A stretch of DNA of 64,000 nt, from IMG/VR virus record IMGVR_UViG_3300029908_000004, positions 62,001-126,000 of that record; one strand, 5' to 3'. The translations under genes were made by a program, and so were the position numbers. Positions 5,769 to 46,387 of the stretch are shown piece after piece; positions within the stretch are counted from its first letter, which is position 1; each line of letters opens with the position of its first letter. The notes beneath the pieces were generated by a model. That model was not told the origin of the DNA and did not search any database. It saw only the letters and a program-made list of their open reading frames with translations.

Positions 5769-5787
5769 TTTTCTTCGTAATTAAGAC

Positions 5788-5822: not shown

Positions 5823-6094
5823 GTGATAAAGATTATTAGAATCGTGTTGGTATACCGTTTTGTACAGTTGTACTCTCTTCATCTTCTAGCTCAATCCTTT
5901 GACCAGAGTCTAGGTTGATAATAGCTACTAGAATATTAATTTCACGATCGTCTTTACTAACTTCTCTCTCTAGGATAACTTGGACGGTATACCCCTGAGT
6001 AGTCCTATCTCTTATGGAAGTAATGTTAGTCCATCTACCGAGTACTGTATTTCCTAGACTGGTGTCTTTTAAAACAAAAGTGTTATTCATCTAT

Positions 6095-6622
6095 TTACTC
6101 TTCTCTTGGAAGTGGAGAGTAAGCAAGTTCTTGCAACTCGTTCATATCTACCGCTTCGTTCTGTTCGGCGAAGTTTCCTTCGTCTATGATTTCAATATCC
6201 CCTTGTTTATCTTTCAATGTTTTACGCATTGAAGAACTTACATCTAACCACATCTTAACATATGTTTCTTCTCTAGATATCGCTGGTGGGTTCTCTCCAG
6301 CACACCAACGAGAACAAGCTTCCATAGCTACATTACGTTGTATAGAGATGTCTAGTTCTAATCCTCTTAGTTGTTTGAATGTCTCAAAAGAAACCGTTTC
6401 TAGACCCTCTGGAATAATTTTGATGGTCCACTCTTTGGCACGTTCATCTTCTATATACTCTTTACATATATCTTCTGCTGCTTCTTGAGCGTCTTTGCTA
6501 GTGCCGAATGTTAACCTAGAATCTAAATTCTGAGTTCTACGACCATCTGGATGTGAAGCGTCTACTATGAATCTCCAACGCCTCATCTTCCTTTTTGAGG
6601 CTTTACTCTTTGGTGTTGGCAT
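6095..6622 (-). CDS. hypothetical protein
   Basis: 175-aa ORF with AGGAG RBS. Confidence 0.7.
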   Translation of the reverse strand: MPTPKSKASKRKMRRWRFIVDASHPDGRRTQNLDSRLTFGTSKDAQEAAEDICKEYIEDERAKEWTIKIIPEGLETVSFETFKQLRGLELDISIQRNVAMEACSRWCAGENPPAISREETYVKMWLDVSSSMRKTLKDKQGDIEIIDEGNFAEQNEAVDMNELQELAYSPLPREE

Positions 6623-7131
6623 ATACTCCTAAATTTGGCTGGGATTGAAGGCTCCCAGCAAGCCCTTACTATTAGAATTAACTAGGATCAAATAGGTAAT
6701 TGGCCTAATAGTAATAACTACACACATATTCCACGCTCTTGTTGGCGGCCCCGGAAATCTGGACGATGTTCCCTACAGCGTTGCGGTCCCCAAACCGCTG
6801 CCAAATCCCGGTGAAACCAGTGTGTAGCAAAAGGTTAATTAACATCTACCGCTGTTTCTCCTCTCCCTCGATTAGCGGTGTCATCGAGGGGCAGGTTAAT
6901 CTGAACCTTTACACGTTGGCTTACTATCAATGATAACGAGATTGGTCCCTGCAGGGTGTTCGTGCTTTTCGAGTACGTACCCTGTAGGACATTGCCACGT
7001 CCCCCAGCCATAATTGGTGTTGGGAAGAATAGCAGGCATATCATCATGATAGTTAATCCATGTAGGTTCAACTGTTTGCTTGTCAATAATTTCACCATCT
7101 TCCATGCGGCGATTCCGCATACTGAAGACTA

Positions 7132-7788
7132 TTACATATTCTTCAGCAAATCTTCTGCGGCTGCCGTTGTCTCAGGATCTTCAGATGTAGTGACAGCTCC
7201 CATGGCACGGTTCAACTTCTCTGTGGCTATATCATTCTGTGCTCGCATGCGCCCTTCAACATCATCGACAGAGATATCTGCCCCACTGCCTACTAATCTA
7301 CCCGCGTGCTCAAGAGCAGTTGCTGCATGAGTTTGAGCCTTCGAGGACTGATTTAGTGCCTCAAGTTCACGAACTTTGCTCAACATCTCTGCATGCTTAC
7401 TGGTAATATTGGCGACTGAAATGTCCATCTTGTTCGATGTTTCCGTCTCTGAAATCAACAAAGCCTGCTTGTTGGTTACTTCATTCTGTAACCGAACAAT
7501 TTCCTTTGCTTTTTCCAAAGCCTGATCAGGATGCCCGTTGTTTTTCAGCTTCGTTGCTGTAATTCTGGAGGTCTCGATTTTTGCATTGAGATCGTCGATC
7601 TCACGCTTTGTCGTGTGAACTGTAGCTGCTGCTACCGCTGCTTCTCCACGTAGCTGGTCAAGAGCCTCTTCCAGATCCCTTACATACTGCCGAAGAGCAG
7701 ATGGACTGTTAAGATCGATCACTTTGTCAAGTAGATCATGGGTCTCACCAAGTCCAATCGTTCTGAGCTTGCTAAAAATTCCTGTCAT
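7132..7788 (-). CDS. PspA/IM30 family protein
   Basis: MTGIFSKL amphipathic N-terminus, LLDKVID..P..LRQYVRDLEE motif, long coiled coil; about 218 aa from the ATG at 7788. Confidence 0.82.
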   Translation of the reverse strand: MTGIFSKLRTIGLGETHDLLDKVIDLNSPSALRQYVRDLEEALDQLRGEAAVAAATVHTTKREIDDLNAKIETSRITATKLKNNGHPDQALEKAKEIVRLQNEVTNKQALLISETETSNKMDISVANITSKHAEMLSKVRELEALNQSSKAQTHAATALEHAGRLVGSGADISVDDVEGRMRAQNDIATEKLNRAMGAVTTSEDPETTAAAEDLLKNM

Positions 7789-7804
7789 TGCCTTTCCCTT
7801 CTTC

Positions 7805-9145
7805 TTAGAAATCGCTACTACCACCGCCGCCGCTGTCGGAACTGCTGCTACTGTCAAAGCTGCTACTCCCGCCGCTGTCAAAGCTAGAACTGGAATCAGA
7901 ACTACCCCAACTGGATGAGCCACCAGACTCGCTTTCACGATCTGGTTCTGGATCTGGAGCTCTGTACGTTGATTCTTCTCGTCTTGGTTCTTCGCGACGA
8001 ATCTCTTCCACACGTGGTCGATTGTTTATAGATTCGCCGATGAGAACACCAGTCAATAAATCATTGTTGGGAGTTGATGTCGGTGTTGGTTCATAAGTCG
8101 GTCTTTGTTCTATGTTATGGTGCTGGTGATGATGCCTAACTTGGTTGTATCCAGTGGTATCATTTACATCGGCAGTGTCAATGGGGGGTCCTTGTTCAGC
8201 CGGCTGTTCCGTTGCCATTGGGCTCTGTACATATTTGTGTGCTGAACGTAGAGACTCGAACTTATCGATGAGGATTCGATATTCTTTGGTAATGGCTTGA
8301 TAACCATCTTCTGTCATACTTTGTTTGGGGTCCATCGAGTCTGAGTTCTCCATATTGGAAAACTCTTCCATATACGTATCAAACATATCTTGAATGGATT
8401 TCTCTGGTGGATCACTCTGGAACGCTGATTTGAGGGTAAGAACTAGCGCAATACATTGATTCTTTGTAACTTGAGCTAACCTCTTCGCTTTTGCTTTGGC
8501 ATCTCTTATTTCTGCCCAACGGGTGCAAGCGATATACCCTGCGGCAATAATGAAGATTAAGAACCCCAATCCAAGACACCATAGTAGTACAGTCCATAAA
8601 CCTTTATAGTCCGTTGCTTGGACATTGGTTGTGTTCTGGACTGGGTGTAGAGCTTCATCTTTGGAAGCCGCTAATCGAAGTGAGAATTGTTCGATACCAG
8701 TAGACATGCCAAGTGCATAGTTACCGTCTTTGAATCTTGGGATCATATAGGACGTCATGATCCGGTTCCAATTTCCGTCTAGTGCGGAATGCCAAGCGGA
8801 ACCATACATTATTCCTACTTTATGATTCCCGGCTAACATAAAAACAATGAGTGTACTTTTACGTCCACCGCTGCCACTTTCCCAAGAGGCACATTGGTTC
8901 TCCATCTGTTTTTCTGTGATATCGAGGTTGGTGCTATACCCGACTGTCCTTATTCGGACATCAGCGCCTTGTTGAACCAACCTGTTCGCAGCGGTTTCTA
9001 CTGTTGTAATACCTTTTCCAAACAGATTTGCTTGGTCAATGACAATGTTGTCACACAATAGAGATTGAGCCATGACCCAACCTGACGTTGAAAACACCAT
9101 CATCATAACCAACAACGTATACATTGTCAGCTTTGAACTTTTCAT
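7805..9145 (-). CDS. TPM-domain (DUF477-like) membrane protein with Gly/Ser-rich tail
   Basis: Signal peptide, IDQANLF and MIPRFKDGNYALGM TPM motifs, one TM helix, C-terminal SGGGGSSDF. Confidence 0.82.
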   Translation of the reverse strand: MKSSKLTMYTLLVMMMVFSTSGWVMAQSLLCDNIVIDQANLFGKGITTVETAANRLVQQGADVRIRTVGYSTNLDITEKQMENQCASWESGSGGRKSTLIVFMLAGNHKVGIMYGSAWHSALDGNWNRIMTSYMIPRFKDGNYALGMSTGIEQFSLRLAASKDEALHPVQNTTNVQATDYKGLWTVLLWCLGLGFLIFIIAAGYIACTRWAEIRDAKAKAKRLAQVTKNQCIALVLTLKSAFQSDPPEKSIQDMFDTYMEEFSNMENSDSMDPKQSMTEDGYQAITKEYRILIDKFESLRSAHKYVQSPMATEQPAEQGPPIDTADVNDTTGYNQVRHHHQHHNIEQRPTYEPTPTSTPNNDLLTGVLIGESINNRPRVEEIRREEPRREESTYRAPDPEPDRESESGGSSSWGSSDSSSSFDSGGSSSFDSSSSSDSGGGGSSDF

Positions 9146-11309: not shown

Positions 11310-12836
11310 TTACACGTCTTTTAGGACGGTGAATGAATCCTTTCGTTTCCTTCTATGACAATTTGTACACATTATGAACTCTTTTGTATCATTTTTACAA
11401 TTGTATTCTTCCCTGATAGTGGTTTTTACCATTCCATGAGGATAATTTATCTCATTACTGTTTTTATCCTTCATCCTAACCCCAGTAGTGAACATCATAG
11501 TTCCTTTACATTTGGGGCACTTTGCTGCTATACGGATAACCTTGGATTGGTCGGAGAAGAATCCAGTTTTCAGAAGTCTATTGACATGTTTATACCAAAC
11601 TTCACAGATTGCTTTCTTAATTGAATCTTTACCATAACTAGGGTTCTCTAGTTGATAGTCAAAAGCACGCTCCAACATTCTTTTATATTCATTACTGGGG
11701 GTGAATCCCCACTCGGTGAGATCGTCGCCAGTAACCAATGGTTTGGGGAATCCAAGAGTCTTAGCAGCAGTTATATACCCTATGGTATTCTCCATATTTA
11801 TAGAGATGATCTTAGCATTAACTAGAATCCATAGTAATTCTATAGCTCTGTTTATATTTGGCTTGTTGGCAAGCTTCCTTCTTTCACATAGTGAAGTAAG
11901 CCTATTAGACCTAAGATCAATTACTATTTGCACCATCTCTGAGATTGTATTTCTGTCTTCGTTAGAGAATTTGAGATATTTTAATACATCCCCAATATTC
12001 CAATATATACCAGTTGTATACAAAAGACAACACCATGCTAAGATTGGATCTTTAACTTGTCCAATCTTGTCGAAATTGACAGTTTGATCTACTATATTAA
12101 AAAGGGAATTTGGTTGTTGCTCATAGATTTTGGTGTATAAATTAGTTCTCTGAAGACAGAACAAAGCGTCACCGACGTGTTCCCCCGTTATGAGCTTTGT
12201 CATTTCGTCTCTAACACGTTCTCGCGAAACCCTAATCATCAAATTTGCATTATTACGAATTGCTCGTAATGTCTCAAATTCTATCTGAAACCCAAGTTGT
12301 GACACGAATCTAACAGCTCTTAACATTCGAAGAGGATCCTCTTGGAAACGAATGTTAGGGTCACCAATACAACCAATCCTTCGTATTGATATATCATATT
12401 TACCACCAACATAATCAATAACTTCCATTGACTCTGGGTTCATCAATATCCCATTCATCCTAAAATCTCTACGACCAGCGTCAATACATTCTTGATCAGT
12501 AAATATAACACTATCCGGTCTACGAAGGTCTGAATACTCAGTAGAATCACTTCTCAATGTAGCTACTTCTATGGAGTGATCTACACCATCTATATCAACA
12601 AGGACTTTTACAACTCCGAATTCTACTCCAATTGGAATATTGTGGGGAAATAGATCCATTACTTCATTGGGTTTAGCTGAAGTACATATATCAAAGTCTT
12701 TCGGTTCCTTGTTCATAAGAAGGTTTCTAACACACCTACCTACAAGGAAGACTTTGAAGTTATTTTGCTTTAACGTCTTAGCTACTTTCCTAGCAGCTTC
12801 TAAACTACTTATCTCTGGCATATATTCCTTGTTCAA
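11310..12836 (-). CDS. cca: tRNA nucleotidyltransferase (CCA-adding enzyme, class II) with C-terminal zinc ribbon
   Basis: VGRCVRN...KDFD, EVATLR, RRDF, EDPLRMLRAVRF, VSRERVRDEM motifs; C-terminal CPKC...CTNC. Confidence 0.9.
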   Translation of the reverse strand: MNKEYMPEISSLEAARKVAKTLKQNNFKVFLVGRCVRNLLMNKEPKDFDICTSAKPNEVMDLFPHNIPIGVEFGVVKVLVDIDGVDHSIEVATLRSDSTEYSDLRRPDSVIFTDQECIDAGRRDFRMNGILMNPESMEVIDYVGGKYDISIRRIGCIGDPNIRFQEDPLRMLRAVRFVSQLGFQIEFETLRAIRNNANLMIRVSRERVRDEMTKLITGEHVGDALFCLQRTNLYTKIYEQQPNSLFNIVDQTVNFDKIGQVKDPILAWCCLLYTTGIYWNIGDVLKYLKFSNEDRNTISEMVQIVIDLRSNRLTSLCERRKLANKPNINRAIELLWILVNAKIISINMENTIGYITAAKTLGFPKPLVTGDDLTEWGFTPSNEYKRMLERAFDYQLENPSYGKDSIKKAICEVWYKHVNRLLKTGFFSDQSKVIRIAAKCPKCKGTMMFTTGVRMKDKNSNEINYPHGMVKTTIREEYNCKNDTKEFIMCTNCHRRKRKDSFTVLKDV

Positions 12837-17593: not shown

Positions 17594-17980
17594 TTAGCCT
17601 TTGAATGTTCCCCAAATCTTCTTATCTTGTGGAAGGTACAGTTCCCACTTCTCATCGAAGTAACAATTACTTGGTGCGTTCTCGAACATCTTTGCCATGT
17701 CTTGGTCACGTAGTCTTGCTCGTCCACAACCTATACGAGTTACTTGGAACTCTCTCTTTTGCTGGTTAATAGCAAAAGATATGAAGTTCTCTACGTAGAC
17801 ATTTATCTCTTTGAGTGTCAATGTCCTTAGGGACCCATCCTTCGTGGGAATAGCATAACTATTCCCGTGGAAACCCATATGACCTTCCACTCCTAATATT
17901 GCTCCATATTCTCTTAGCGCTGTTAACGCCGCGCCGGCTCCGTGGCGACCCCCGAGGTTAGAACCGAAGACAAATATCAC
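17594..17980 (-). CDS. A1S_2505-family (macrodomain-like) phage protein
   Basis: IFVFGSNLGGRHGAGAA, SYAIPTKD, FQVTRIGCG signatures. Confidence 0.85.
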   Translation of the reverse strand: MIFVFGSNLGGRHGAGAALTALREYGAILGVEGHMGFHGNSYAIPTKDGSLRTLTLKEINVYVENFISFAINQQKREFQVTRIGCGRARLRDQDMAKMFENAPSNCYFDEKWELYLPQDKKIWGTFKG

Positions 17981-17995
17981 TTTTGTTACTCTCTT

Positions 17996-19237
17996 TCATT
18001 TTAAGATACCTTTGAAGGACTCAACTGACATTCTGTCCTCGAACCTTGGTCCAAACGAGATTGTGTTGATAGTCGGTTCCAACAAATTCTTTAGAACAGA
18101 CAAGTAAGTGCTTAGACTCGGGGGTTGTATAAACAAACCCTTCTCTGAGTCGATTATCTTCAGATAGTCTGTCCACCTGTCCAAATGGGACAAAGCTATT
18201 TCATCTACGCCTTTACAAATCTTAATGGACTTATTGACAAGCCCAATGTCCAAGTGTCCCACCCGAAACTCCCCTTGATACTCGCCTTTCTGGTTATGAT
18301 TTTCTGGCAGTAAACCAGTTAATCTCATATCCTCGGTTGGGAATGGACCCACTCCGTGACGAGTGGCGTAGGTTCTTATACAGCCAATTCTGACTCTGTT
18401 ACCAATGAACCCAGAAATGTTGAGCAAATCATCAGCATTCCTGAAAGTTGTGTTGGTCCATGAGTTATACGGATAGGTCCCATACCACTCATCTAACATT
18501 ACTCCTTGTGCCCCCTCGAACACAGATGCAGTGGATTTTGATAGCAAATCAGAAAGGAACTCTTGTGGCTTTACCTGAGCGTTCCATTTGCTATATATCC
18601 GACTGTGCCATTCAGACCAGTCTTCATTACTATCTACTATGATGTCGTAGTCCTTTTTCCACTGGTCCACTGGTATCTTTTCCAATGTCGGAAGCAGCTC
18701 TTTCAGCTTGGCGAGGTACACCTTGTGAAGGAAGCTCAATTTGCTACGTGTTACCTCTTCTGATTCTATGTCTTTAGCAAATAGGACGTTGTTCCCATAT
18801 TCAATGGAATCACTACGAGTTTGTCCTATTCCTTGTCCACAGCTACCGTGTCTGTTCTTCCCTCTGGCAATTTCTCTCAACCTTCCAAAAGCTATTTGGA
18901 AGGGAGTGACTACCAAGCAATCCCCATCAACAAATGTTCTGTCCCATATATCAGTTATCCCAAGGGACATTAGATGAGCTGCTTCTCTCATCATGTAGAA
19001 TGGATTGACCAATGTAAACTTGGACAAGTAAGTCTTCACATTGGGTTGTAGCATCCCACTACCAAACTGTTGGAAGGTATGGCTTCTCGATAATTCAACA
19101 ACGTTATGTGCAGCTTGTGGCCCACCGTTGTATCGAACTATCAAATCAGCTTTGTGAGTACGGGTTAGATACTCTACGTGGGCTCCTTTTGCGCAATCGC
19201 CCCATAGCATCCCAGCAACGAGATATGCTATACCCAT
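17996..19237 (-). CDS. adenylosuccinate synthetase-like protein (divergent PurA family)
   Basis: WGDCAKG, VRYNGGPQAAHNV, HGSCGQGIG, FEGAQGVMLD, RTYATRHGVGPFPTE, FRVGHLD. Confidence 0.88.
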   Translation of the reverse strand: MGIAYLVAGMLWGDCAKGAHVEYLTRTHKADLIVRYNGGPQAAHNVVELSRSHTFQQFGSGMLQPNVKTYLSKFTLVNPFYMMREAAHLMSLGITDIWDRTFVDGDCLVVTPFQIAFGRLREIARGKNRHGSCGQGIGQTRSDSIEYGNNVLFAKDIESEEVTRSKLSFLHKVYLAKLKELLPTLEKIPVDQWKKDYDIIVDSNEDWSEWHSRIYSKWNAQVKPQEFLSDLLSKSTASVFEGAQGVMLDEWYGTYPYNSWTNTTFRNADDLLNISGFIGNRVRIGCIRTYATRHGVGPFPTEDMRLTGLLPENHNQKGEYQGEFRVGHLDIGLVNKSIKICKGVDEIALSHLDRWTDYLKIIDSEKGLFIQPPSLSTYLSVLKNLLEPTINTISFGPRFEDRMSVESFKGILK

Positions 19238-19555
19238 TAGTACCTCCATCTCTATTTGAGTTTGTGCTGTAATACTTACATGGATGAAGCATTCCTGATT
19301 ACTTAGTTAAGCACAAGAAGTTGACGTTTCACCTCTCGATTTTCTTATCTAACCATTCAGTGAACACCATGAAACTATCTCTTGGTGTTAACATTGACAC
19401 TACAAGGGTGATAGGGCCTAACAGAACAAATATGACCAAACCGACTACGAATAACAAAGTTCGGTTCCTACGATCACACTGTTCTGTATAGGCCCATATC
19501 CAAGGTAGTGCCATAACAAGACCGAACGCTACCCAGATTTCCACCAAATGCATGG

Positions 19556-20479
19556 TTAAGACTCTTCTCTGAAGAACTCTCCACCACTTGCAGTTGCTGT
19601 GGAGGCTTTCTCCTTGTCTGTCGCTTCAGCTTTCTCCATCTCTGAGGCAACGACTTCGATTAGATGCTTTGGACTCTGAACGGTGATAACGTTGTTATCA
19701 CCAACCAGTTTTACATACTGCTCTCTGGCCTCTGTCTGTCCACTGGTAGGCCAAAGGAACATTAGATGATACTTTGCTTGAACTTCTTTGACGATCTCCT
19801 CAATGGGGATGTCAGCTTGGATGTGATCGTCGAAAACATATTCCACATGTTTCGCGCTCACTTTACTGAACACTGGCTCGTCGGCATAGAGGAACATGTA
19901 CCCTTTCTTTCCTCTCTTATCCAGTGAGTCAAGCTTCGTCTTGCGAGCGGCGCAGTACAACAGTAGATCGTAAGACTCTCCCGGGTTAGAGCCGCCCCGT
20001 CCAATTAACCAAGTTGCACATATCGAGTCGTCGATACGATTGTCTGATTCAAAATCGGACACCTGAATACAGGATGGACCTGAAGTCAGGTAATCATCGT
20101 TTGACCAGACAGCAACTTGTGGATTGGGTATCACTTTCAGCAGTCGTGCCATCAGAGTTGGCAGCTCCTTTTGTGCGATGACAGCGTTGCTGTAGTTTGA
20201 TCCAGTTACATCAAACGTGAGAATGACAGGCAAAGATTCAGGGTGTTCTGTACTGTCACAACTCTCCAGAACCCCCATTGCTTTCTTGTTGATCCGAAGA
20301 GGATCAAGCATCTGATTAACCTTTTGTGTCTTTTCTGCCTCCTCGGTGTAAGCGAAATCCTTTACCCCTGATTTGGAACGTAATGCTCTTGCCGTTCCAT
20401 AACTCGCTTCTGAAAATGTTCCTCCTCCGATATAGCTAACCCATCCCTTTCCTAAGATTGAGTTTGGCAAATTCTCCAA
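19556..20479 (-). CDS. von Willebrand factor A domain protein
   Basis: ILTFDVTGSN MIDAS-like motif, GRGGSNPGESY, KKGYMFLYADE. Confidence 0.82.
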   Translation of the reverse strand: MENLPNSILGKGWVSYIGGGTFSEASYGTARALRSKSGVKDFAYTEEAEKTQKVNQMLDPLRINKKAMGVLESCDSTEHPESLPVILTFDVTGSNYSNAVIAQKELPTLMARLLKVIPNPQVAVWSNDDYLTSGPSCIQVSDFESDNRIDDSICATWLIGRGGSNPGESYDLLLYCAARKTKLDSLDKRGKKGYMFLYADEPVFSKVSAKHVEYVFDDHIQADIPIEEIVKEVQAKYHLMFLWPTSGQTEAREQYVKLVGDNNVITVQSPKHLIEVVASEMEKAEATDKEKASTATASGGEFFREES

Positions 20480-37205: not shown

Positions 37206-38345
37206 TCAACCAACGTTGTTGGTTGGTTGTTGTGTCTCCTCTGTTGAGGAGTTTGATGGGAGAATCCTCCCATATACTCCTTTGTCGATGGCCTTGATGT
37301 AACCTCTGTCCTTTAACGATTGGACAGTGGCATATATCGGTTGCTTTCTTGTACCGATGTCCATGCCACGACTGGCGAGTAGTTTGATGAGAGCCAGAAC
37401 ATCGAATGTTTTCTCTGGTTCTTTCTCCCATTCCTCCATAATCGTCCTTACCATATCCGTTGGCTTGTAAGGACTCAGTATGCGGGAATGTGTTTGTTTC
37501 TTTGGCTCGGTAGCCTTCGCTAAAGCTTGTTTCTGGAAGACAGACAAGAATGGTTCTACCTTCTTGCTCTCTTCCATGGCTAGGTCATACCAGTTTAACA
37601 ACTCGTTGACCATTGACATTTGTTGGACTGCCTCAGCCTTAACAGCTTCGGCAGTATCGATTATTCGCCGGGCTTCCGCGAACTGCTCCTCACAGCGAAT
37701 AATCCGCCGCTCTAAATCCTGCTTGAGTTCGCGAGCGCCGGCTATTCTTAAATCCAGAATACTCGGCATCTCTTCACTCCCCTTCGTTGGTTTAACAGTA
37801 TTCACTTCACCCAACTCACGTTGTTCTGCCAAGTAGGCGTTCATTGCTGGCATCCCGTTTTCGTTACGAATGCGGGCTGCTTCAGCAAGAACTTCTTGTT
37901 TATAAGTGAACACTTGACCTTTGGGTTTACTCTCCCGAACCTTCCGTATTGGATGATACACCAATACTTCTGGTTCCGTCTCCACCTTGGGTTTTGGCAC
38001 AAGCTTGGCCAACTCCTCAAGATTACGTAGAGCTTGCTCTTCCACAGCAGACTTGCTAACAACTAGCAACTGCTTGTGTACAGATTTCTTCGCCTTCTTC
38101 TTTACCACTTTGGCGACCAAGGTTACTGCCTTGTAAGGTTTCGCCTTTGGCTTGATGCCAAGCATCCCCTTTAACTCAGCCAAGTGGTTAGCGTATGACC
38201 TATACGCTGAAGGCGTCTTTGACAAAACGAATGTTTCGCCGTTGGATAGCGTGTATACATAGTGCTTCTTCTGCCTTACGCAGGTAGCACCATCCCGCTT
38301 TAAGATAGCTTCGATTTGGTCCTTAGGCGGCTTAACTGTTGACAT
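37206..38345 (-). CDS. multi-domain protein: HicA-like N-terminus, coiled coil, C-terminal winged helix
   Basis: LKRDGATCVRQKKHYVYTLSNG..FVLSKTPS HicA-like pattern; IYATVQSLKDRGYIKAIDKGVY wHTH-like. Confidence 0.6.
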   Translation of the reverse strand: MSTVKPPKDQIEAILKRDGATCVRQKKHYVYTLSNGETFVLSKTPSAYRSYANHLAELKGMLGIKPKAKPYKAVTLVAKVVKKKAKKSVHKQLLVVSKSAVEEQALRNLEELAKLVPKPKVETEPEVLVYHPIRKVRESKPKGQVFTYKQEVLAEAARIRNENGMPAMNAYLAEQRELGEVNTVKPTKGSEEMPSILDLRIAGARELKQDLERRIIRCEEQFAEARRIIDTAEAVKAEAVQQMSMVNELLNWYDLAMEESKKVEPFLSVFQKQALAKATEPKKQTHSRILSPYKPTDMVRTIMEEWEKEPEKTFDVLALIKLLASRGMDIGTRKQPIYATVQSLKDRGYIKAIDKGVYGRILPSNSSTEETQQPTNNVG

Positions 38346-38351
38346 ACCACC

Positions 38352-38654
38352 TCACAGTTGACAGATTGTTTTGTTCTTGTAGCCCGGATCTCTGAGATAA
38401 CTTACGATCCGGCGTAGCAAGCCCTTCCAAACGATGTTCGCAGTTGGGCTGCATGTATCACAGCATCTACGTAGAACATCCCAGTGTCTGTAACAAACGA
38501 GCCGATCACAATGTTCACAAACGTATTCCATGGGTAATTTACAATCACCCATCTTTTGCACTGGCGTAACCAGTCGGAATTCCATTCCTTTTGGCACGTT
38601 ACCAGTGTAAAAACCTGTTGTCTTCCCATCCGTTCCAACTAACAATTGAGCCAT
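38352..38654 (-). CDS. zinc-finger hypothetical protein
   Basis: CEHC, CYRH, CDTC motifs; GAGGTG RBS. Confidence 0.65.
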   Translation of the reverse strand: MAQLLVGTDGKTTGFYTGNVPKGMEFRLVTPVQKMGDCKLPMEYVCEHCDRLVCYRHWDVLRRCCDTCSPTANIVWKGLLRRIVSYLRDPGYKNKTICQL

Positions 38655-38695
38655 TGCTCACCTCCAGCTTTGTCCCTTCCAAATGAAATAGGAGG

Positions 38696-38741
38696 GCTAA
38701 GACAGTATGTACATGGTATAGTTTGGTAGGCTGTCTTAGCC
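38696..38741 (-). terminator. stem-loop downstream of the Cas7-like gene (possible terminator or processing hairpin)
   Basis: GGCTAAGACAG...CTGTCTTAGCC 11-bp inverted repeat about 40 nt after the stop. Confidence 0.5.
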
Positions 38742-38783
38742 AGTTTATGAAGGAGGAGCCCTACCACCAAAATCGCGTGTTTG

Positions 38784-39575
38784 CTAAGCTTTCAGGTTGA
38801 GCACCTCTGCTTGGTCCACTCGGAACTTGCCACATTCGAGGCTTCGTACGCTGCCGAGTCCACAGTTGCTACTCATGGCGAGAATACTGAGGATGTCATC
38901 CTCATTGACCTTGCCCGGAACGAATCGGTACACGAAGTGAATGCGACTTCCTTCTGGAGCCACTTCACTGTCATGGACGATTGATGCCGCGCCTTTGGGT
39001 GTTTGAACACGACCCATGAACGTCTCGAAGTGCGTTTTCACTGGTTCGCCGGCTGGCGTTACCATGTAGACATGGTTCGGATGGTCGCTGTCGATCAACG
39101 ATTGACCGACTGCTCTGACACGCCCACCTTCGGAGAAGTTACCCTTGGTGCCGATTTTGCCCTTGAATAAGCCTGTTCTGCTGGCTGCCTGCTTGAGCAT
39201 GGCCTTCATCATCCAGTCACCAAGCCAGACGCCCTTGTCGCTGTGCCGTAACACGTTGACGCCGTAAGATTCCACTTCGACAATCTCTGGCGCTGCCGCC
39301 GTTACCGAAGCTTCACTGCTTGGGTCAACCTGAATGGTTGGTTTCTTCTCACCAACCTCTTGTTTGAGTATACGCCTAACGGCCTCCTCGAACAAGATTT
39401 TCTGTTCTTCCGTTTCCTGCGGTAGCTTCATCTGAAAGGCGACGAATGCTCGTACACCTTCTTCACCGCCGGGTTGTCCACCGACAACCTTCGTTAAGAA
39501 TGTTGCGTGAATTTCCAATGATGCAGTGAGGCCTATAAAGCGTCCCTCCACATCGTCCGATGTAAATGTAGCCAT
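38784..39575 (-). CDS. stand-alone Cas7/RAMP-like RNA-binding protein (putative effector of the adjacent array)
   Basis: N-terminal strand TFLTKVVGG; VWLGDWMMKAMLKQAA (cf. RAMP IPGSSLKGALR); SEVAPEGSRIHF (cf. E.VP.G..F); C-terminal Gly-rich loop GLGSVRSLECGKF (cf. GLG..RS.GYG.F); no other cas gene in the window. Confidence 0.85.
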   Translation of the reverse strand: MATFTSDDVEGRFIGLTASLEIHATFLTKVVGGQPGGEEGVRAFVAFQMKLPQETEEQKILFEEAVRRILKQEVGEKKPTIQVDPSSEASVTAAAPEIVEVESYGVNVLRHSDKGVWLGDWMMKAMLKQAASRTGLFKGKIGTKGNFSEGGRVRAVGQSLIDSDHPNHVYMVTPAGEPVKTHFETFMGRVQTPKGAASIVHDSEVAPEGSRIHFVYRFVPGKVNEDDILSILAMSSNCGLGSVRSLECGKFRVDQAEVLNLKA

Positions 39576-39592
39576 ATAGGCCCCCTTGATTG

Positions 39593-40008
39593 TAAAACTG
39601 TTGAGATGGAAGCGGTGTCACGATGTTTTGCCGCCTCGAAGTATCAGATCACGAGTCGTCAAGTTTTGCTGCTCAGTTCAGTCTTGTAGCGTCTCATCTT
39701 ACCTTGCCACCACGTCTCGTTGAGCCTTGTCTCAACTTGTCACTATGTGGAATTTTGTAATGTCGAGCTGCAATGTTACATGTAATGGAATGTAACCTTG
39801 CCGCCGCGTCCCATACCGCTTTGCATCGGCAGATGTTATCTTGCCGCCAAGTTATACTCTGTGATGTCTAGCCGCTAAGTTAGAACTTAACTCGACATGT
39901 TCTGCCGCTTCGATATATGACATCTTGGATTGCCACTACATACGGAAGAATCACATAACGGACTGCCGCTGTGTATTGACATGATGTATACAGCTTCGGT
40001 TTGCCTCT
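39593..40008 (-). repeat. non-CRISPR guide-like array: 12 x 8-nt RGYGGCAR repeats with 5n-nt pentamer-phased spacers
   Basis: Repeats start (plus coordinates) at 39628, 39666, 39704, 39737, 39765, 39798, 39841, 39869, 39902, 39930, 39963, 40001; spacers are 30,30,25,20,25,35,20,25,20,25,30 nt; all 57 spacer pentamers are NNYNN on the minus strand. Confidence 0.9.
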
Positions 40009-40093
40009 TAGTTCTGGGGGCACCTAGCCCCTGTACTACGGTAGTACTAACCAACTTTGTGATGATCAAACGAATCTCTGCTTATCCCTCCTC

Positions 40094-40417
40094 CTAAACC
40101 GTGTTTTTAATACGGTCTTCGTCGTCCATGATTTCACACTTGCTACACCTTGCTTGGGAAGCAGTGTAAATACCACAGAATTCACAGGTGAACTCGATAT
40201 CACCAGGGTGATCGTGGGTAAAGCCACATACACAAGGGAACCCGAATTCTGGATTACCACAAGCACAAGGCATTGTCTCCCTTTCTGGGTTCCATGATAA
40301 CTCGACCGCCTCCTTACAAATGGGGCAGCACTCGTGTGTTACCCAATGAACTGGTCCATCTACTTCTTTAACGAATCGTTTGCACCAGCCACATAGAACA
40401 AGCACAAAGATCTCCAA
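40094..40417 (-). CDS. Cys-rich zinc-finger protein
   Basis: Multiple CxxC motifs (CGWC, CPIC, CEFC, CSKC). Confidence 0.55.
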   Translation of the reverse strand: MEIFVLVLCGWCKRFVKEVDGPVHWVTHECCPICKEAVELSWNPERETMPCACGNPEFGFPCVCGFTHDHPGDIEFTCEFCGIYTASQARCSKCEIMDDEDRIKNTV

Positions 40418-42226: not shown

Positions 42227-45200
42227 TTATCCCACCTCATCAGGATTAGGTTCTTCGAATGCCTCATAATTCTTCTGAGGCAACAAAGACTCGTGTGATT
42301 CTCTCAGAATCACCATTCCATCTTCCATTGTGAAGCCACCGAACTCTATCCCCTCGTCCTCTAGCCTTACAGGGATAGTTCCAATAGCTTCCATAGTGCT
42401 TAACCGATACACAATACCAGCCTCCTTGATCACAACATCAACCTTAGCTTCGCCAAGGTCATAAGCAAACTCCTCGTCCAAATCCACTGGTACTACAAGC
42501 CCAGTTATTGGACGCAGCTTACGAGTCTTGATATCCATATACTTGATATCCCGACTCGCCTGAATAATCGCATTACCCATGCGCTTAGTCCACAACATAC
42601 CATCTGGGAAGCTCTTTCGCTTCCCCATCTCCTCTCCCTCAACAACATACTGAGCATCTGCGTAGATGGTGTGATACAGATAGCAGAGCAGCTCTACAGC
42701 CATCTGCTTAACAGTGTCATCATCAAACTGTGCCAGATACTCAGCACAATCATTCTCTACCTTCTTATACGCTTCGTTAAGACCCTCTCTGGTCATTGGA
42801 TTACCAGCGCCAAGGATAGCTTTCCAGCCACCTCTCCACACCTGTATATAACCAGGCGCATCTTCACGCTTCCGACCGGGATTGGAACCGAGATAGACAG
42901 CGATGTCCGGGCTATGCCCACCCATCTCAAACACAAATGCTTCATCGGCAGGAGCTACTGATATCCACTCACGCAGCTTCAGACGATCTATCAACACATC
43001 ACGTTTATGTGTTAAGTCTTTCAGACTCTTACACATAAGCGAGTCATAAATGTGATAATCAGCCTTAGCTACCTTAGTGGTGGGGATTCTAAGGGTATCC
43101 TTCCCACTAATACGCTTACCCATAGTAGCAATATATGGATAGATCAGAGTCCCTTCCAATCCAATGTTCTCAACAGGTTCTCTACCTTCCTGTAAGCCAC
43201 TATGGAACTGACGTACAGCATCGCTAACGTTACCAAGTTGAACCAAGATGTTTGCATCCAGAACAACGCCATCAATGACATGTTCCAGATTAGTTTCAAA
43301 CTTCCTCATCTGATAAAGAGGTCTCATCACAAACCACTCACGGGTTGCTTCGAGGTCAGCAATCTTAGCAAGGTTACCAAACCTCTTAGCTTCAGCGATT
43401 TCAGCATCGAGCTGTTCAAACATATATGCCCGATCCGCTGCATTGGACAACCTATTGTCAATCATATTTGCATTAACAACAGGTCCAATTCCAGCACCGC
43501 TCCTCTGCTTCCTATCAATCTGATAAGCAAAGTGCCGATTGTTATACCATTCCTTCACGCCGCGACCGGGGATTTTATAACCTTCAGCTTCTGCTTCTTC
43601 ATCAAACTGACGACGAAGCACAGCTCCTGACTTCTTGATCTTAGCAGTTTCTGGATACGGGTTATCGTTCAATTCCTTGAACTTGTTAACCCAGAATTCA
43701 TCAAATACTACGATGAAGCGATCATCCAGATCACCACCACCTAATCTGGCTAACACTTTGTTACAGCCAGCGCCGAGAATGATAATACCTTTCCCAGCGA
43801 ACCTAGCATAACGCTGATGGTGGATATTCTTGAGAATCACGAATGCATTCTGATTCTCATTTGGTTGTCTATAACAGGCAACCAAAATACCAGCAGGGAT
43901 GTCCATCATACAGCACTCATCTTTACCAATGAGCTCATCCTCAATTGGTAACAGATTCCCTTCCGTATCATGCATATACGGGTCATGGATACAATATCCA
44001 CTAACAGCTACCTTATCCAATGGGATACGTCCACGCTCCATTTGCATGACACGATACATCATGAAGTTGTTAACCCTACGACCCAATCCCGGGTACTTAA
44101 GAGCAGACCATCCATTGATGACCGCTTCTCTCAGCACCCAAGCATCCCAATCAATCATTGAGATCCCATCATTGTAGTAATGCTCATCATCACGTACACT
44201 GTTGATATACTTAACCAACAGCTTCGTGATTTCCTTGTTATCCATCGTCTTGTTCCAATAATCCAGACGGAACAGCTGAGCTTGATAATCAATCATGCCC
44301 GGACGCTCAAAGCGGAAGTTATCCCAGCTTTGCATATCACTGAACGGCATGATCTTCTTCAGCTTACCAAAACAGCCGAAGTAGAACCGCTCATTCTTAA
44401 TCATAGTCTTGGACCCATACACTACGAAGTCATACTCCAAATCCTCCTTATAGACGAAGTTACCCTTCGGCATACCTACATACCTCTCACCAATAGTGCA
44501 CTGCCATGCATCTCCAATACGTGGATGCTTGCTAAGTCCAACAGACTTTGCACCATGTTCTCCTACCAAGCCGCCACCATCCAACCGAGCAGCGTCATCA
44601 TCTGTCAGTCCATCGATGCTATTAAACTTCACGGTAATGATGGCACCGTTATCCAAACGATACACACCAATACCAGCGACAACATCGAACTTAACCGGTT
44701 TACCTAACGCATGCACCCAAGTTGGTGCCATCTCACGGTTTAAATACTTACCCGCTTTCAGGCATTTCTCCAAATCATTGAGCTCAATCCAGATCCCAAC
44801 ACTTCTCAAATCCACTAAATTTGTCATGGCATCAGGAACGAGATAAGCAGTAGCCCTGTCATCTCTCTGATAACCAAACAAACACTTATAGTGGATTCCC
44901 TCGTATTGATACCCACTGTTCATAACTCGCTCTGCTACCGCAGAGTCATCAGTTACAAACTCTATGTAGGTACAGTCTAATGCGTCTTCCAACAGCCATG
45001 GAACTTCCGCATACGGCCCATAAGCTCTGAAGAACTTAGGATCATCGTCAAGTTTTGACCCAAACTTAACTTTATTACGACGATGAGCCTCTGTATACGG
45101 AGTCCGAGTAACAAGCTTCTTGTTACTCTTCATCCATTCAACAACAGCGATCTTCTTTACTCCTCCATCATCCATCTTTACTACCTCCTTTACAACATCC

Positions 45201-46000
45201 TTCTTAACCGGTTCAGTAGGAACCGGAGGATTCAATTTAGTCCAGAGCTGCTCAGGGCTAATACGCACCATAGGTGCATTAACCCGAAGGCAATAACGCC
45301 ATCTGTTGTTAACAGACTCATACATCACACACCAACCACTCGTTAGATACCAAACAGTATCTAACGCATTAGGTTGGAGTGCTCCCTTAACCTTCTCATT
45401 CAAGAAGGCAAATAGTCTCTCCTTAACAGGTACCTCAATAACCGGTACCTTCTCAACAACAGGTTCAATCCGAGGCTCACCAAGCTTGGTAAATGCCTCA
45501 TCCACCACGGTATCAGAGACATATTGGTCGCCAAGCAGTTTCTTTACAATCACATCCTGAGATACCTCGTTCAATTGCTTATCAGCAATAGAACGCATAC
45601 CCCAGCGATTCGCATCAATGTTATGAGCGACAAACGTTGTGCCAATGTCCCAACTCTGGAACCCCGGCATAGACAAAGAAGGCTTACCCACTTCCTTATT
45701 TAGGTAATCCAACAAATTGATTACCTTAGGAGTTTCAGCCTTCTTCTCCACAACTGGCTCAGCCGGCTGAGATACAGGTACCTTCACCAACGCCTTCTCA
45801 GCTTCCAATAGAAGTGTTACCTTAGTCACATTGGACCGGATCCACTTCTTAGCCTCCTCATTCCTAACCGCCCAGATATCGGTATTTTCATAGAACATCA
45901 CCGACAAACCACCGATGACAAACAAAGTCTTGTTACCATCCTGTTTGTCCGCAGAAGCACCCATAGCAGCAAACAACGCAACCAACGTATTAGAATCCAT
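42227..46000 (-). CDS. single-subunit two-barrel RNA polymerase-like protein (YonO / cellular RdRP-like family)
   Basis: Motifs in the family order: RLDGGGLV, AWQCTIG..GMPKG, YRQP, LGGGDLDD, IGPVVN, HVIDG; about 1257 aa; start at MDSN after GGAG. Confidence 0.75.
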   Translation of the reverse strand: MDSNTLVALFAAMGASADKQDGNKTLFVIGGLSVMFYENTDIWAVRNEEAKKWIRSNVTKVTLLLEAEKALVKVPVSQPAEPVVEKKAETPKVINLLDYLNKEVGKPSLSMPGFQSWDIGTTFVAHNIDANRWGMRSIADKQLNEVSQDVIVKKLLGDQYVSDTVVDEAFTKLGEPRIEPVVEKVPVIEVPVKERLFAFLNEKVKGALQPNALDTVWYLTSGWCVMYESVNNRWRYCLRVNAPMVRISPEQLWTKLNPPVPTEPVKKDVVKEVVKMDDGGVKKIAVVEWMKSNKKLVTRTPYTEAHRRNKVKFGSKLDDDPKFFRAYGPYAEVPWLLEDALDCTYIEFVTDDSAVAERVMNSGYQYEGIHYKCLFGYQRDDRATAYLVPDAMTNLVDLRSVGIWIELNDLEKCLKAGKYLNREMAPTWVHALGKPVKFDVVAGIGVYRLDNGAIITVKFNSIDGLTDDDAARLDGGGLVGEHGAKSVGLSKHPRIGDAWQCTIGERYVGMPKGNFVYKEDLEYDFVVYGSKTMIKNERFYFGCFGKLKKIMPFSDMQSWDNFRFERPGMIDYQAQLFRLDYWNKTMDNKEITKLLVKYINSVRDDEHYYNDGISMIDWDAWVLREAVINGWSALKYPGLGRRVNNFMMYRVMQMERGRIPLDKVAVSGYCIHDPYMHDTEGNLLPIEDELIGKDECCMMDIPAGILVACYRQPNENQNAFVILKNIHHQRYARFAGKGIIILGAGCNKVLARLGGGDLDDRFIVVFDEFWVNKFKELNDNPYPETAKIKKSGAVLRRQFDEEAEAEGYKIPGRGVKEWYNNRHFAYQIDRKQRSGAGIGPVVNANMIDNRLSNAADRAYMFEQLDAEIAEAKRFGNLAKIADLEATREWFVMRPLYQMRKFETNLEHVIDGVVLDANILVQLGNVSDAVRQFHSGLQEGREPVENIGLEGTLIYPYIATMGKRISGKDTLRIPTTKVAKADYHIYDSLMCKSLKDLTHKRDVLIDRLKLREWISVAPADEAFVFEMGGHSPDIAVYLGSNPGRKREDAPGYIQVWRGGWKAILGAGNPMTREGLNEAYKKVENDCAEYLAQFDDDTVKQMAVELLCYLYHTIYADAQYVVEGEEMGKRKSFPDGMLWTKRMGNAIIQASRDIKYMDIKTRKLRPITGLVVPVDLDEEFAYDLGEAKVDVVIKEAGIVYRLSTMEAIGTIPVRLEDEGIEFGGFTMEDGMVILRESHESLLPQKNYEAFEEPNPDEVG

Positions 46001-46387
46001 AACACACTCCATGCCCAGAAGGGCATCTCCGTTAGTGGTATGCTTTTCACATCCACGTTTAAGCGTATCTCGTATAACAATACGAGACAGATGTTTCTAG
46101 AGGTTGTTCATCCAATAACCAATAGCAGTTAATACTTCTTCCTTAGTGCCAACGCATACATTCAAAGGCACCGCTATCTTGCTTCCGCCCTCTTCAATAA
46201 ATAGGGCACGGTATTCACCACTCTGTTTATCACGAGCAATGGTGACACGTTGGGAGAAGAACACCCTTCGTACATCAATATCAGACAACGACATTCTATT
46301 CCTCCTTGTTACAGAGCTACCTCTTATAGCAGGTATGCTCAAAGAGTAATACTAGGGACATAACCTAGTATTAAACTCTCAGCATAT

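What the first reader, a model, noticed from the sequence alone, without database searches (positions are those of the whole stretch)
38784..40060. Phage-encoded RNA-guided system candidate: lone Cas7/RAMP-like gene plus a non-CRISPR periodic guide array
Seen: a 263-aa ORF with RAMP hallmarks (LGDWMMKAMLKQAA, SEVAPEGSRIHF, C-terminal GLGSVRSLECGKF loop). Only 17 nt upstream of its ATG, on the same strand, ends a roughly 415-nt non-coding array of twelve 8-nt repeats (sense: AGAGGCAA, AGCGGCAG, AGTGGCAA, AGCGGCAG, AGCGGCTA, GGCGGCAA, GGCGGCAA, TGCAGCTC, AGTGACAA, GGTGGCAA, AGCAGCAA, GGCGGCAA) with unique spacers. No cas1/2/3/5/6/8/10 or canonical CRISPR repeat is recognisable in the window. Established: Cas7 proteins polymerise along guide RNA at a fixed nucleotide step. 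Inference: this is a minimal two-component system in which the protein oligomerises on each array unit at one subunit per 5 nt and targets nucleic acid without a nuclease, for example to silence competing phages or host defence genes. From memory, it resembles recently reported viral VIPR-type loci (RAMP plus GGY/NN tandem RNA), but here the conserved part is NAY/NNY, so it may be a distinct variant.
Basis: partly seen in the sequence, partly recalled or inferred. Interest (0 to 1): 0.97.

Follow-up and report, generated by a model that had tools for sequence, protein, structure and literature searches.

The report
Phage VIPR-type RNA-guide system, variant repeat
A giant phage from peat carries a small CRISPR-like (RAMP) protein next to a transcribed array of 5-base repeats; this matches the VIPR RNA-guided gene-silencing systems described in 2026, but it uses a different repeat "scaffold" and much shorter guides.

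Summary
ORF 38784-39575 (-) encodes a 263-aa protein whose confident model has a Cas7/Csm3 fold. Its best AlphaFold-DB matches include all five seed proteins of the published VIPR family. Directly upstream on the same strand, 39593-40008 holds 12 abutting units of 28-43 nt, each 5n+3 long. Each unit reads GGY-NN, then (N-A-Y-N-N) x4-7, then RGY. The third base is a pyrimidine in 63 of 63 pentamers, and the last two bases are hypervariable. At least 21 of 33 non-redundant homologous loci carry the same kind of array beside the gene. Four peat or permafrost metatranscriptomes cover the array more deeply than its neighbours. No CRISPR repeats and no conserved accessory gene were found. Best reading: a VIPR-type system in which Vipr protomers coat a 5-nt-periodic guide RNA. 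It differs from the characterised type II (SUSP1): NAY replaces GGY, units have only 5-8 pentamers, and there is no 3' tail, ribozyme or vap gene. The protein clade is absent from GenBank phages. Target, processing and DNA binding are inferred, not shown. My target scans were no better than a scrambled control. Whether this equals one of the published types I-VII cannot be settled from the accessible text.

The parts
38784..39575 (-). vipr-like gene: 263-aa RAMP (Cas7-fold) protein, P0001
   Evidence: ORF. AlphaFold model has pLDDT 90.9 and pTM 0.83. Foldseek PDB top hits are type VII Cas7 and Csm3, with VIA-align Z 12.4. AFDB cluster hits at ranks 1, 2, 3, 13 and 25 are the five Vipr seed proteins. 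G-loop is G239-L-G-S-V-R-S-L-E-C-G-K-F251, helix-1 is residues 120-133 and the long beta-hairpin (thumb) is 182-206. No Pfam or PDB sequence hit.
39576..39592 (-). 17-nt spacer with Shine-Dalgarno (AAGGGGG) between the array and the vipr ATG
   Evidence: Read directly from the sequence. A metatranscriptome contig from run X12 spans 39410-40059, across the junction.
39593..40008 (-). vrRNA-like array of 12 abutting units. Unit starts (minus strand): 40008, 39970, 39937, 39909, 39876, 39848, 39805, 39772, 39744, 39711, 39673, 39635. Each unit is RGY|GGY-NN followed by 4-7 N-A-Y-N-N pentamers. The last unit runs into the vipr 5' UTR without a closing motif.
   Evidence: Searches give the register, 63/63 Y and spacings of 5n+3. 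No excess RNA structure (z = -0.6). Highest metatranscriptome depth in the region. Strain SNPs at 39707 and 39740 toggle G/A at base 5 of two boundary 8-mers.
40009..40093 (-). 85-nt leader between the upstream gene's stop and the first unit. It contains the inverted repeat GTACTAC-CG-TAGTAC (about 40047-40033) and the hairpin GGGGC-TAGGT-GCCCC (40031-40017). The promoter was not identified.
   Evidence: Sequence. The sigma-70 scan finds no promoter on this strand. Metatranscriptome contigs run through it from the upstream gene.
38655..38783 (-). 129-nt intergenic tail after the vipr stop, with an 11-bp-stem hairpin (GGCTAAGACAG...CTGTCTTAGCC, about 38696-38742). It may be a terminator and contains no periodic repeats.
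   Evidence: Sequence. Metatranscriptome depth drops here in 3 of 4 runs. No array downstream.

Best explanation
This is a phage-encoded VIPR-type RNA-guided system made of two parts: a Vipr-like RAMP protein and an upstream array of vrRNA-like guides that is probably co-transcribed with it. The most likely mechanism follows.

The leader-array-vipr region is transcribed (supported at contig level). Vipr protomers polymerise along the RNA, one per pentamer. They sequester the conserved N-A-Y trinucleotide and expose the two hypervariable bases (inferred from SUSP1 cryo-EM and the RAMP fold). The extra three bases at each RGY|GGY boundary break the 5-nt register, so each 28-43-nt unit forms its own short filament of 5-8 protomers or is cut out there (inferred). 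Each filament reads double-stranded DNA of a competing phage, satellite or host gene through its NN dinucleotides and blocks transcription without cleavage (inferred by analogy; no nuclease or accessory gene is conserved beside it).

The scaffold differs from the characterised GGY code. A weak profile alignment maps the G-loop residues that read the two guanines in SUSP1 Vipr (D177, W178) onto Ser242 and Val/Ala243 here, while the arginine that holds the pyrimidine (R179) is kept as R244. This fits 'Y kept, GG lost'.
For: - **Fold.** Model pLDDT 90.9. Z is 12.4 to Csm3 and 11.9 to type VII Cas7. AFDB ranks 1-3, 13 and 25 are A0A1F4YLN4, A0A2D6XG06, A0A0F9A1L0, A0A661D0E2 and X1U2U4. These are exactly the five non-CRISPR RAMPs that seeded the VIPR discovery.
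- **Array in the window.** 63/63 Y, spacings of 5n+3.
- **Array family-wide.** Across 345 units from 22 loci, positions 4 and 5 have entropy 1.97 and 1.99 bits. Position 2 is A 69% / G 20%, and position 3 is C 78% / T 22%. The boundary motif is A-G-C-G-G-Y-N-N.
- **Co-occurrence and co-orientation.** Seen in at least 21 of 33 non-redundant loci and in the NCBI metagenome contig L120, which has 25 units. More distant relatives have GAC/NN arrays with another punctuation motif.
- **Expression.** Contigs from 4 metatranscriptomes cover the array at depths 17.4, 10.7, 11 and 6.3. The vipr ORF is covered at about 9, 5-8, 4 and 2, and 37994-38381 is at 0 in all four.
- **Viral context.** The source is a 215-kb IMG/VR contig encoding terminase and portal.
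- **No CRISPR repeats**, **no conserved neighbouring gene** and **no ribozyme**.
- **G-loop mapping** comes from hhalign and the SUSP1 residues.
- **SUSP1 locus re-derived** for comparison.
Against:
- Contigs carry no strand information, and DNA carry-over in RNA libraries cannot be fully excluded.
- Sequence-profile similarity to experimentally characterised type II Vipr is weak: hhalign probability 15%, E 0.0017, C-terminal 59 columns only.
- In SUSP1, GGY>GAY and GGY>AAY substitutions abolish silencing, so the scaffold here requires a different protein specificity that is only inferred.
- Units give only 10-16 specifying bases under the 2-of-5 rule, which is little for unique genomic targeting.
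- IMG/VR scans under the 1-nt-skip rule were indistinguishable from a reversed-order control: 32 against 33 hits, both clustering in frame in one protein family.
- Position 1 changes as fast as positions 4 and 5 between related units, so NN shows no extra constraint.
Confidence: 0.78

Rival explanations
1. Same components, different code. Three contiguous RNA bases per pentamer (positions 4, 5 and the next position 1) pair with the target, and only R-Y is sequestered (an NNN/RY, 3-of-5 code). A 5-8-pentamer unit would then read a contiguous 15-24-nt target.
For: Position 1 is nearly as variable as NN: entropy 1.88 against 1.97 and 1.99 bits. It also diverges at the same rate between related units: 12/14/18 and 73/68/93 mismatches at positions 1/4/5. 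Short units give too little specificity under a 2-of-5 code. The SUSP1 residue that reads G1 (D177) is replaced by an invariant Ser. The published alternative repeat 'YNNNG' also frees this position.
Against: Position 1 keeps a G bias (43%), as expected for a degenerate scaffold base. Triplets N4N5N1 contain stop codons at only mildly reduced frequency: 54 against 69 expected, p = 0.015, with TGA enriched. In IMG/VR hits, the skipped base matched N1 at about the chance rate. There is no structural or biochemical support.
Confidence: 0.12
2. The RNP targets RNA, as the structurally closest solved proteins do (Csm3 and type VII Cas7). It would silence or sequester transcripts rather than DNA.
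For: The nearest PDB folds are RNA-targeting Cas7 subunits. The SUSP1 RNP can also engage ssRNA in vitro, since an ssRNA ternary data set is listed.
Against: The closest structures overall are Vipr seeds, whose characterised members bind dsDNA. No partner nuclease (Cas10, Cas14 or a protease) lies in the locus. I did not test whether the Csm3 catalytic Asp is present.
Confidence: 0.07
3. The array is not a guide array. It could be a cis-regulatory 5' leader or decoy that titrates the RAMP protein (autoregulation), or a DNA-level element such as iterons or phased bending, and the protein would have another role.
For: The array sits in the 5' UTR of the gene in this phage, and its last unit runs into the RBS. 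No target was found.
Against: In many homologous loci the array lies downstream of the gene, or on both sides, and reaches 1-1.6 kb with dozens of units. That does not fit a 5' leader. The hypervariable NN inside a fixed scaffold, the strict strand co-orientation and the array turnover between related phages are what guide arrays show. A DNA-level element would not need co-orientation with the gene.
Confidence: 0.03

Closest known systems
VIPR type II (Escherichia phage SUSP1, P. fulva prophage): Vipr + vrRNA (bioRxiv 10.64898/2026.04.26.720920, .720927, 2026.10.15.759431)
   Same: Both are phage-encoded with a single small RAMP protein bearing an RRM core, G-loop and thumb. Both have flanking non-coding arrays with 5-nt periodicity, in which a conserved trinucleotide ending in a pyrimidine alternates with a hypervariable NN. 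Neither has CRISPR repeats or cas1/cas2. The RNA is expressed.
   Different: The scaffold is N-A-Y (A 62% here, 69% family-wide) instead of GGY, and GGY occurs only once per unit. Units have 5-8 pentamers (28-43 nt) instead of 9-16 plus a roughly 40-nt pseudoknotted 3' tail. Units abut with a +3 register shift. There is no vap gene. The protein is 263 aa with a low-confidence insert at about residues 72-101, against 195 aa. G-loop is GLGS(V/A)RS against GVGDWRP. Profile similarity is only E 0.0017.
Other published VIPR types (I, III-VII), with 'related consensus' repeats (NNNGG, YNNNG, NNNNG), staggered tail-less arrays and ribozyme-interspersed arrays
   Same: The top structural neighbours A0A1F4YLN4 and A0A2D6XG06 are seeds of that census. 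Abutting units without spacers resemble the 'staggered arrays' described in the fig. S18 legend. A vap-less architecture appears to exist, since six vap genes are reported for seven types.
   Different: Every alternative consensus named in the text keeps the G just 5' of the pyrimidine, whereas here it is A. No hammerhead ribozymes are present. The clade has no hit in 50,697 GenBank phage genomes and occurs in 1 of 185,579 species genomes, so the NCBI-based census may not contain it. The type logos are in figures I cannot read, so identity with a published type is neither shown nor excluded.
Class 1 CRISPR backbone subunits Cas7/Csm3 (type III-A, e.g. 6XN3, 6IFK) and type VII Cas7 (8YHE, 9J9E)
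   Same: Same fold (Z 11.5-12.4 over about 167 residues). The expected function is the same: polymerising on a guide RNA at a fixed step, with a thumb that flips out bases.
   Different: There is no CRISPR repeat-spacer array and no Cas5, Cas6, Cas10 or Cas14 partner. The step is 5 nt rather than 6 nt. Sequence identity is 9-15% and no Pfam RAMP hit is found.

Membership tests
VIPR (Vipr protein + vrRNA) | Protein with RAMP architecture: RRM core, glycine-rich loop, thumb | tested here: met
   Model pLDDT 90.9. Foldseek against PDB gives E 3e-7 to Cas7/Csm3 and Z 12.4. C-terminal GLGSVRSLECGKF loop and beta-hairpin 182-206.
VIPR (Vipr protein + vrRNA) | Closer to Vipr proteins than to CRISPR RAMPs | tested here: met
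   AFDB-cluster ranks 1, 2 and 3 (E 5.5e-11, 1.1e-10, 2.9e-6), plus ranks 13 and 25, are the five Vipr seed accessions named in the discovery paper. BFVD top hits are phage RAMPs. No phylogeny was built.
VIPR (Vipr protein + vrRNA) | Sequence homology to experimentally characterised Vipr (SUSP1, type II) | tested here: inconclusive
   hhalign of A1 against A3 gives probability 15% and E 0.0017, over the G-loop region only. The type II HMM reaches only distant superfamily members, P0174 at 8e-4 and P0170 at 1.8e-3 with Z = 1e6.
VIPR (Vipr protein + vrRNA) | Adjacent non-coding tandem pentanucleotide repeats with a conserved trinucleotide and hypervariable NN | tested here: met
   Window: 63/63 Y at position 3. 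Family: NN entropy 1.97 and 1.99 bits over 1740 pentamers. Arrays lie beside the gene in at least 21 of 33 loci.
VIPR (Vipr protein + vrRNA) | Conserved trinucleotide is GGY, or a published alternative (NNNGG, YNNNG, NNNNG) | tested here: not met
   The consensus is N-A-Y (A 69%, G 20% at the base before Y), and GGY occurs once per unit at the boundary. In SUSP1, GGY>GAY and GGY>AAY abolish function.
VIPR (Vipr protein + vrRNA) | vrRNA of 9-16 repeats followed by a conserved structured 3' tail (type II architecture) | tested here: not met
   Units have 5-8 pentamers here and 3-11 family-wide, and they abut with no tail. No excess structure, z = -0.6. No Rfam ribozyme.
VIPR (Vipr protein + vrRNA) | Accessory vap gene next to vipr (typical, not universal) | tested here: not met
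   All-against-all BLASTP of neighbouring ORFs in 33 loci finds no conserved neighbour. The flanking small Cys-rich ORFs have no Pfam hit.
VIPR (Vipr protein + vrRNA) | Viral or proviral genome; no CRISPR array or cas operon | tested here: met
   215-kb IMG/VR contig. Terminase, portal and tRNA genes present. No CRISPR-like direct repeats in 64 kb. cas genes were not exhaustively scanned.
VIPR (Vipr protein + vrRNA) | Array is expressed as small RNAs that co-purify with the protein | tested here: inconclusive
   Contigs from four metatranscriptomes cover the array at the highest local depth. Contigs give no strand, ends or processing. Co-purification is not testable, and complex prediction did not fold the job.
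VIPR (Vipr protein + vrRNA) | NN dinucleotides specify dsDNA targets with a 1-nt skip; repression of competing mobile elements | tested here: inconclusive
   IMG/VR pattern scans gave 0, 8 and 32 hits. A reversed-order control gave 33 hits with the same in-frame clustering. No natural target was established.
CRISPR-Cas class 1 effector (Cas7/Csm3) | Cas7 fold | tested here: met
CRISPR-Cas class 1 effector (Cas7/Csm3) | CRISPR repeat-spacer array and partner cas genes (Cas5, Cas6, Cas10, Cas8, Cas1-2) | tested here: not met
   No direct repeats of 20 nt or more within 120 nt anywhere in the window. Neighbours have no Pfam or PHROG Cas hits. No conserved neighbours in homologous loci.

The most novel reading that the evidence does not exclude
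This clade may define a second VIPR 'alphabet'. Its protein would read an R-Y (A-Y) dinucleotide scaffold and present three contiguous bases per pentamer, or would string several short out-of-register filaments together. In that case very short, tail-less, self-delimiting guides of 28-43 nt would recognise contiguous 15-24-nt targets. That would be a recognition code and an array-punctuation mechanism not described for VIPR, and orthogonal to GGY systems.
Probability: 0.12. Interest if true: 0.8.

Novelty: new variant of a known kind. Interest (0 to 1): 0.55.

Why it matters
VIPR was described only in 2026 and characterised in one type (GGY/NN, SUSP1 and P. fulva). This locus and its relatives number about 100 clusters at 50% identity, with about 560 in the wider superfamily. 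They show that the same protein fold works with a different RNA scaffold (A-Y instead of G-G-Y). They also use far shorter, tail-less guides punctuated by a 3-nt frame shift, and they have no accessory gene.

If confirmed, this would give:
- a natural test of how Vipr G-loop residues set scaffold specificity (D-W against S-A/V);
- a candidate orthogonal VIPR system for multiplexed programmable repression;
- evidence from peat metatranscriptomes that such systems are active in uncultured jumbo phages.

It is not a new kind of system. The kind is already published.

Tried and rejected
1. **Natural target search under the published 1-nt-skip rule.** A 22-base-specified guide from L015 gave 0 IMG/VR hits. 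A 16-base-specified guide shared by L013 and L015 gave 8 scattered hits. The window's longest unit (39848) gave 32 hits, 19 of them in frame in a small 'KNL(D/E)KGGAW' protein family. This looked like a target until a control with the same dinucleotides in reversed order gave 33 hits, 29 in frame and 18 in one family. I rejected it as evidence, because codon-like patterns plus database redundancy produce the same picture.
2. **Homologue of the 'KNLEKGGAW' protein in the window.** None was found.
3. **Position-specific constraint between related units.** Positions 1, 4 and 5 diverge equally, which gives no support for selection on NN alone.
4. **Stop-codon depletion in N4N5N1 triplets.** The effect was weak and not decisive.
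5. **Complex prediction with three protomers plus one RNA unit.** The job was not folded by the tool, so it gives no evidence either way.
6. **Direct sequence links.** There was no Pfam hit, no PDB sequence hit and no tblastn hit in GenBank phages. hhalign to type II Vipr was weak.
7. **Conserved accessory gene.** None was found.
8. **Ribozymes and Rfam families in the arrays.** None were found.
9. **Assignment to a published VIPR type.** The type logos and data tables are not in the accessible text or supplement.
10. **Considered and rejected.** A coding region does not fit, since the period is 5 rather than 3 and there is no conserved ORF. A CRISPR array does not fit, since there is no long repeat. 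A structured ncRNA does not fit (z = -0.6).
Full report
**1. What is in the sequence.**

The window is part of IMG/VR contig IMGVR_UViG_3300029908_000004, 215 kb, from a peat metagenome. It is a phage: it encodes a terminase large subunit, portal, DNA ligase, tRNA nucleotidyltransferase and two tRNA-Met genes.

Their start-to-start spacings are 38, 33, 28, 33, 28, 43, 33, 28, 33, 38 and 38 nt. Every spacing is therefore 5n+3.

When the sequence between 8-mers is cut into pentamers, the third base is C or T in 63 of 63. The second base is A in 39 of 63. Positions 1, 4 and 5 are variable.

The 8-mer itself reads R-G-Y-G-G-C-A-A. This is a truncated pentamer (RGY) followed by one canonical GGY-NN pentamer. 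A unit is therefore GGY-NN, then (N-A-Y-N-N) x4-7, then RGY.

The tract ends 17 nt before the ATG, and those 17 nt hold the ribosome-binding site. It is the only such tract in the 64 kb. Tandem-repeat and CRISPR-type repeat searches are blind to it. The RNA has no more predicted structure than shuffled sequence (z = -0.6).

**2. The protein.**

The protein has no Pfam family and no PDB sequence match. It does have 64 close homologues. A full HMM search found 559 representatives, 102 of them below 1e-30.

With that alignment, AlphaFold2 gives a confident model (pLDDT 90.9, pTM 0.83). Foldseek and VIA-align place it in the Cas7 fold: type VII Cas7 and Csm3, at E about 3e-7 and Z up to 12.4 over about 167 residues.

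Against 2.3 million AlphaFold-DB clusters, ranks 1, 2 and 3 are A0A1F4YLN4, A0A2D6XG06 and A0A0F9A1L0. A0A661D0E2 and X1U2U4 are at ranks 13 and 25. These are exactly the five stand-alone RAMPs that the VIPR discovery paper lists as its seeds. The remaining hits are CRISPR Csm3, Cmr4 and Cmr6 proteins.

**3. Related loci.**

Viral, metagenomic and genomic scans returned 40 loci, and one more came by exact look-up. In at least 21 of 33 non-redundant loci, an array of the same kind lies within 1 kb of the gene on the gene's strand. It can be upstream, downstream or on both sides, and it reaches up to 1.6 kb. Most loci without an array have very short flanks.

Over 345 units and 1740 pentamers:
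- position 4 has entropy 1.97 bits and position 5 has 1.99 bits;
- position 1 has 1.88 bits, with G at 43%;
- position 2 is A 69% and G 20%;
- position 3 is C 78% and T 22% (pyrimidine was required by the parser);
- the boundary motif is A-G-C-G-G-Y-N-N, with its last two bases as variable as NN;
- unit lengths run from 18 to 58 nt, with modes at 28, 33 and 38.

Related phages share some units and differ in others, and arrays contain internal duplicates. More distant relatives of about 200-215 aa carry GAC/NN arrays punctuated by ACCTTGYGAC instead.

No neighbouring gene is conserved across the family, and no ribozyme or other Rfam family lies in the arrays.

**4. Expression.**

Four metatranscriptomic runs from peat and permafrost hold contigs that are 99-100% identical to the locus. 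The array is covered at word depths of 17.4, 10.7, 11 and 6.3. The vipr ORF is covered at roughly half that. The 379-aa gene downstream (37994-38381) has zero depth in all four runs.

This patchiness argues for RNA rather than DNA carry-over. Contigs give no strand and no ends, so transcription is supported but processing is not shown. One contig spans the array-vipr junction (39410-40059).

The only differences among strains across 8.8 kb lie in the array. Changes at 39707 and 39740 toggle G/A at base 5 of two boundary motifs.

**5. Comparison with the known system.**

VIPR was described in three 2026 preprints. In it, a roughly 20-kDa phage RAMP (Vipr) polymerises one protomer per pentamer on vrRNAs made of 9-16 GGY/NN repeats plus a structured 3' tail. 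The NN bases read dsDNA with a 1-nt skip and silence competing satellites or prophages.

I re-derived the SUSP1 locus from KT454805.2. Vipr is L116:28477-29061(-), 195 aa, with H17 and D177-W178-R179 as in the paper. A GGTNN x11 vrRNA lies upstream.

Profile-profile comparison of the window's family with the SUSP1 family is weak: E 0.0017, probability 15%. It does align the G-loops, GLGS(V/A)RS...GKF against GVGDWRPRFGRF. Read through the cryo-EM description, the residues that recognise G1 and G2 (D177, W178) become Ser242 and Val/Ala243. The arginine that stacks on the pyrimidine (R179) is retained as R244. This matches an RNA scaffold that keeps Y but has lost GG. It is an inference from a weak alignment.

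In SUSP1, GGY>GAY and GGY>AAY abolish silencing, so this clade must have a different scaffold specificity.

**6. Membership and novelty.**

The locus meets the following defining features of VIPR:
- RAMP fold closest to Vipr seeds;
- viral and non-CRISPR context;
- a pentanucleotide array with hypervariable NN;
- expression.

It does not meet the type II specifics: GGY, 9-16 repeats, a 3' tail and a vap gene.

The paper mentions seven types with 'a related consensus' (NNNGG, YNNNG, NNNNG), tail-less 'staggered' arrays, and apparently one vap-less type. All the consensus forms it names keep the G before the pyrimidine, whereas here it is A. The type logos and tables are not in the accessible text, so I cannot exclude that this clade is one of types I-VII.

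Some evidence argues against that:
- the clade has no tblastn hit in 50,697 GenBank phage genomes;
- it occurs in 1 of 185,579 species-representative genomes;
- one of its NCBI records is a WGS metagenome assembly (GCA_044231025.1), which may have no proteins in NR, whereas the published census was PSI-BLAST against NR.

Some evidence argues for it: a type II HMM marginally reaches distant members of the superfamily, so an iterated search could get there.

I therefore file it as a new variant of a known kind, and not as a new kind.

**7. What remains open.**

Targets: scans of IMG/VR with guides written under the 1-nt-skip rule produced attractive in-frame clusters, but a reversed-order control produced the same picture. 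Nothing can be concluded about targets.

With only 5-8 NN per unit, a 2-of-5 code gives 10-16 specifying bases. Position 1 is almost as variable as NN and evolves as fast. That leaves room for a 3-of-5 reading, but the stop-triplet and skip-base tests give it no real support.

How units are separated is unknown. It could be cleavage at RGY|GGY, or simply a break in filament register.

Noticed in passing
window 17996-19249 (-), with 17594-17980 (-) and 19556-20479 (-): The 417-aa ORF matches PHROG 1211, '2-aminooxy adenylosuccinate synthetase' (PurZ-like), at E 1e-61. It is flanked by conserved phage ORFs of unknown function (phrog_2072, phrog_2971). The phage may therefore make 2-aminoadenine (Z) DNA. 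I did not distinguish PurZ from PurA and did not look for DatZ or MazZ.
   Followed up: partly
window 39707 and 39740: The only strain differences seen across 8.8 kb, and across four metatranscriptomes, are two transitions. Each toggles G/A at base 5 of a boundary 8-mer (GGTGGCAA<->GGTGACAA; AGTGACAA<->AGTGGCAA). GGY and GAY therefore seem interchangeable at unit boundaries.
   Followed up: partly
L013:35-87 and L015:391-443 (also L003:3794 against 3847; L027:1170 against 1503): One 53-nt unit is shared by two different phage contigs. It keeps 7 of 9 NN dinucleotides while 8 scaffold bases differ. Arrays also contain near-identical internal duplicates. Over all related pairs, however, positions 1, 4 and 5 diverge equally.
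   Followed up: yes
L117:1-445, L118:360-860; L050:3710-4110 (Microcystis phage Mae-JY09, PP395641.1): Distant relatives of about 200-215 aa have upstream GAC/NN arrays punctuated by ACCTTGYGAC rather than AGCGGY. The Mae-JY09 homologue (28% identical to P0194) is followed by a C-rich tract that looks 5-nt periodic (NCC/NN). That tract was not analysed statistically.
   Followed up: partly
L006 (= L034) 4001-8200, 163-kb viral contig: This vipr homologue has no adjacent periodic array. Instead it is followed by a cluster of 19 tRNA genes. I saw no vrRNA-like units between the tRNAs.
   Followed up: partly
window 40094-40417 (-) and 38352-38654 (-): The two small ORFs flanking the locus (107 and 100 aa) are cysteine-rich with CxxC pairs, resembling zinc ribbons. 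They have no Pfam hit and are not conserved next to vipr in other loci, so they are not counted as accessory genes.
   Followed up: partly
window 42227-46012 (-): A 1261-aa ORF two kilobases upstream of the locus has no Pfam or PHROG match.
   Followed up: no
window 38696-38742: A hairpin with an 11-bp stem (GGCTAAGACAG / CTGTCTTAGCC) and a loop of about 25 nt lies just after the vipr stop codon. It may be a terminator, although it lacks a T-run.
   Followed up: no
window 2032-2108, 3293-3367 (-), 11310-12836 (-): The phage carries two tRNA-Met(CAT) genes and a tRNA nucleotidyltransferase (CCA-adding enzyme-like, PHROG 2244, E 1.6e-47).
   Followed up: no
IMG/VR loci L052, L055, L058, L068, L078 and others: A widespread phage protein family of 80-95 aa and unknown function has an N-terminal KNL(D/E)KGGAW motif and no Pfam or PHROG hit. 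It surfaced only as pattern-scan hits. The control scan shows that the match to the window's guide is not evidence of targeting.
   Followed up: yes
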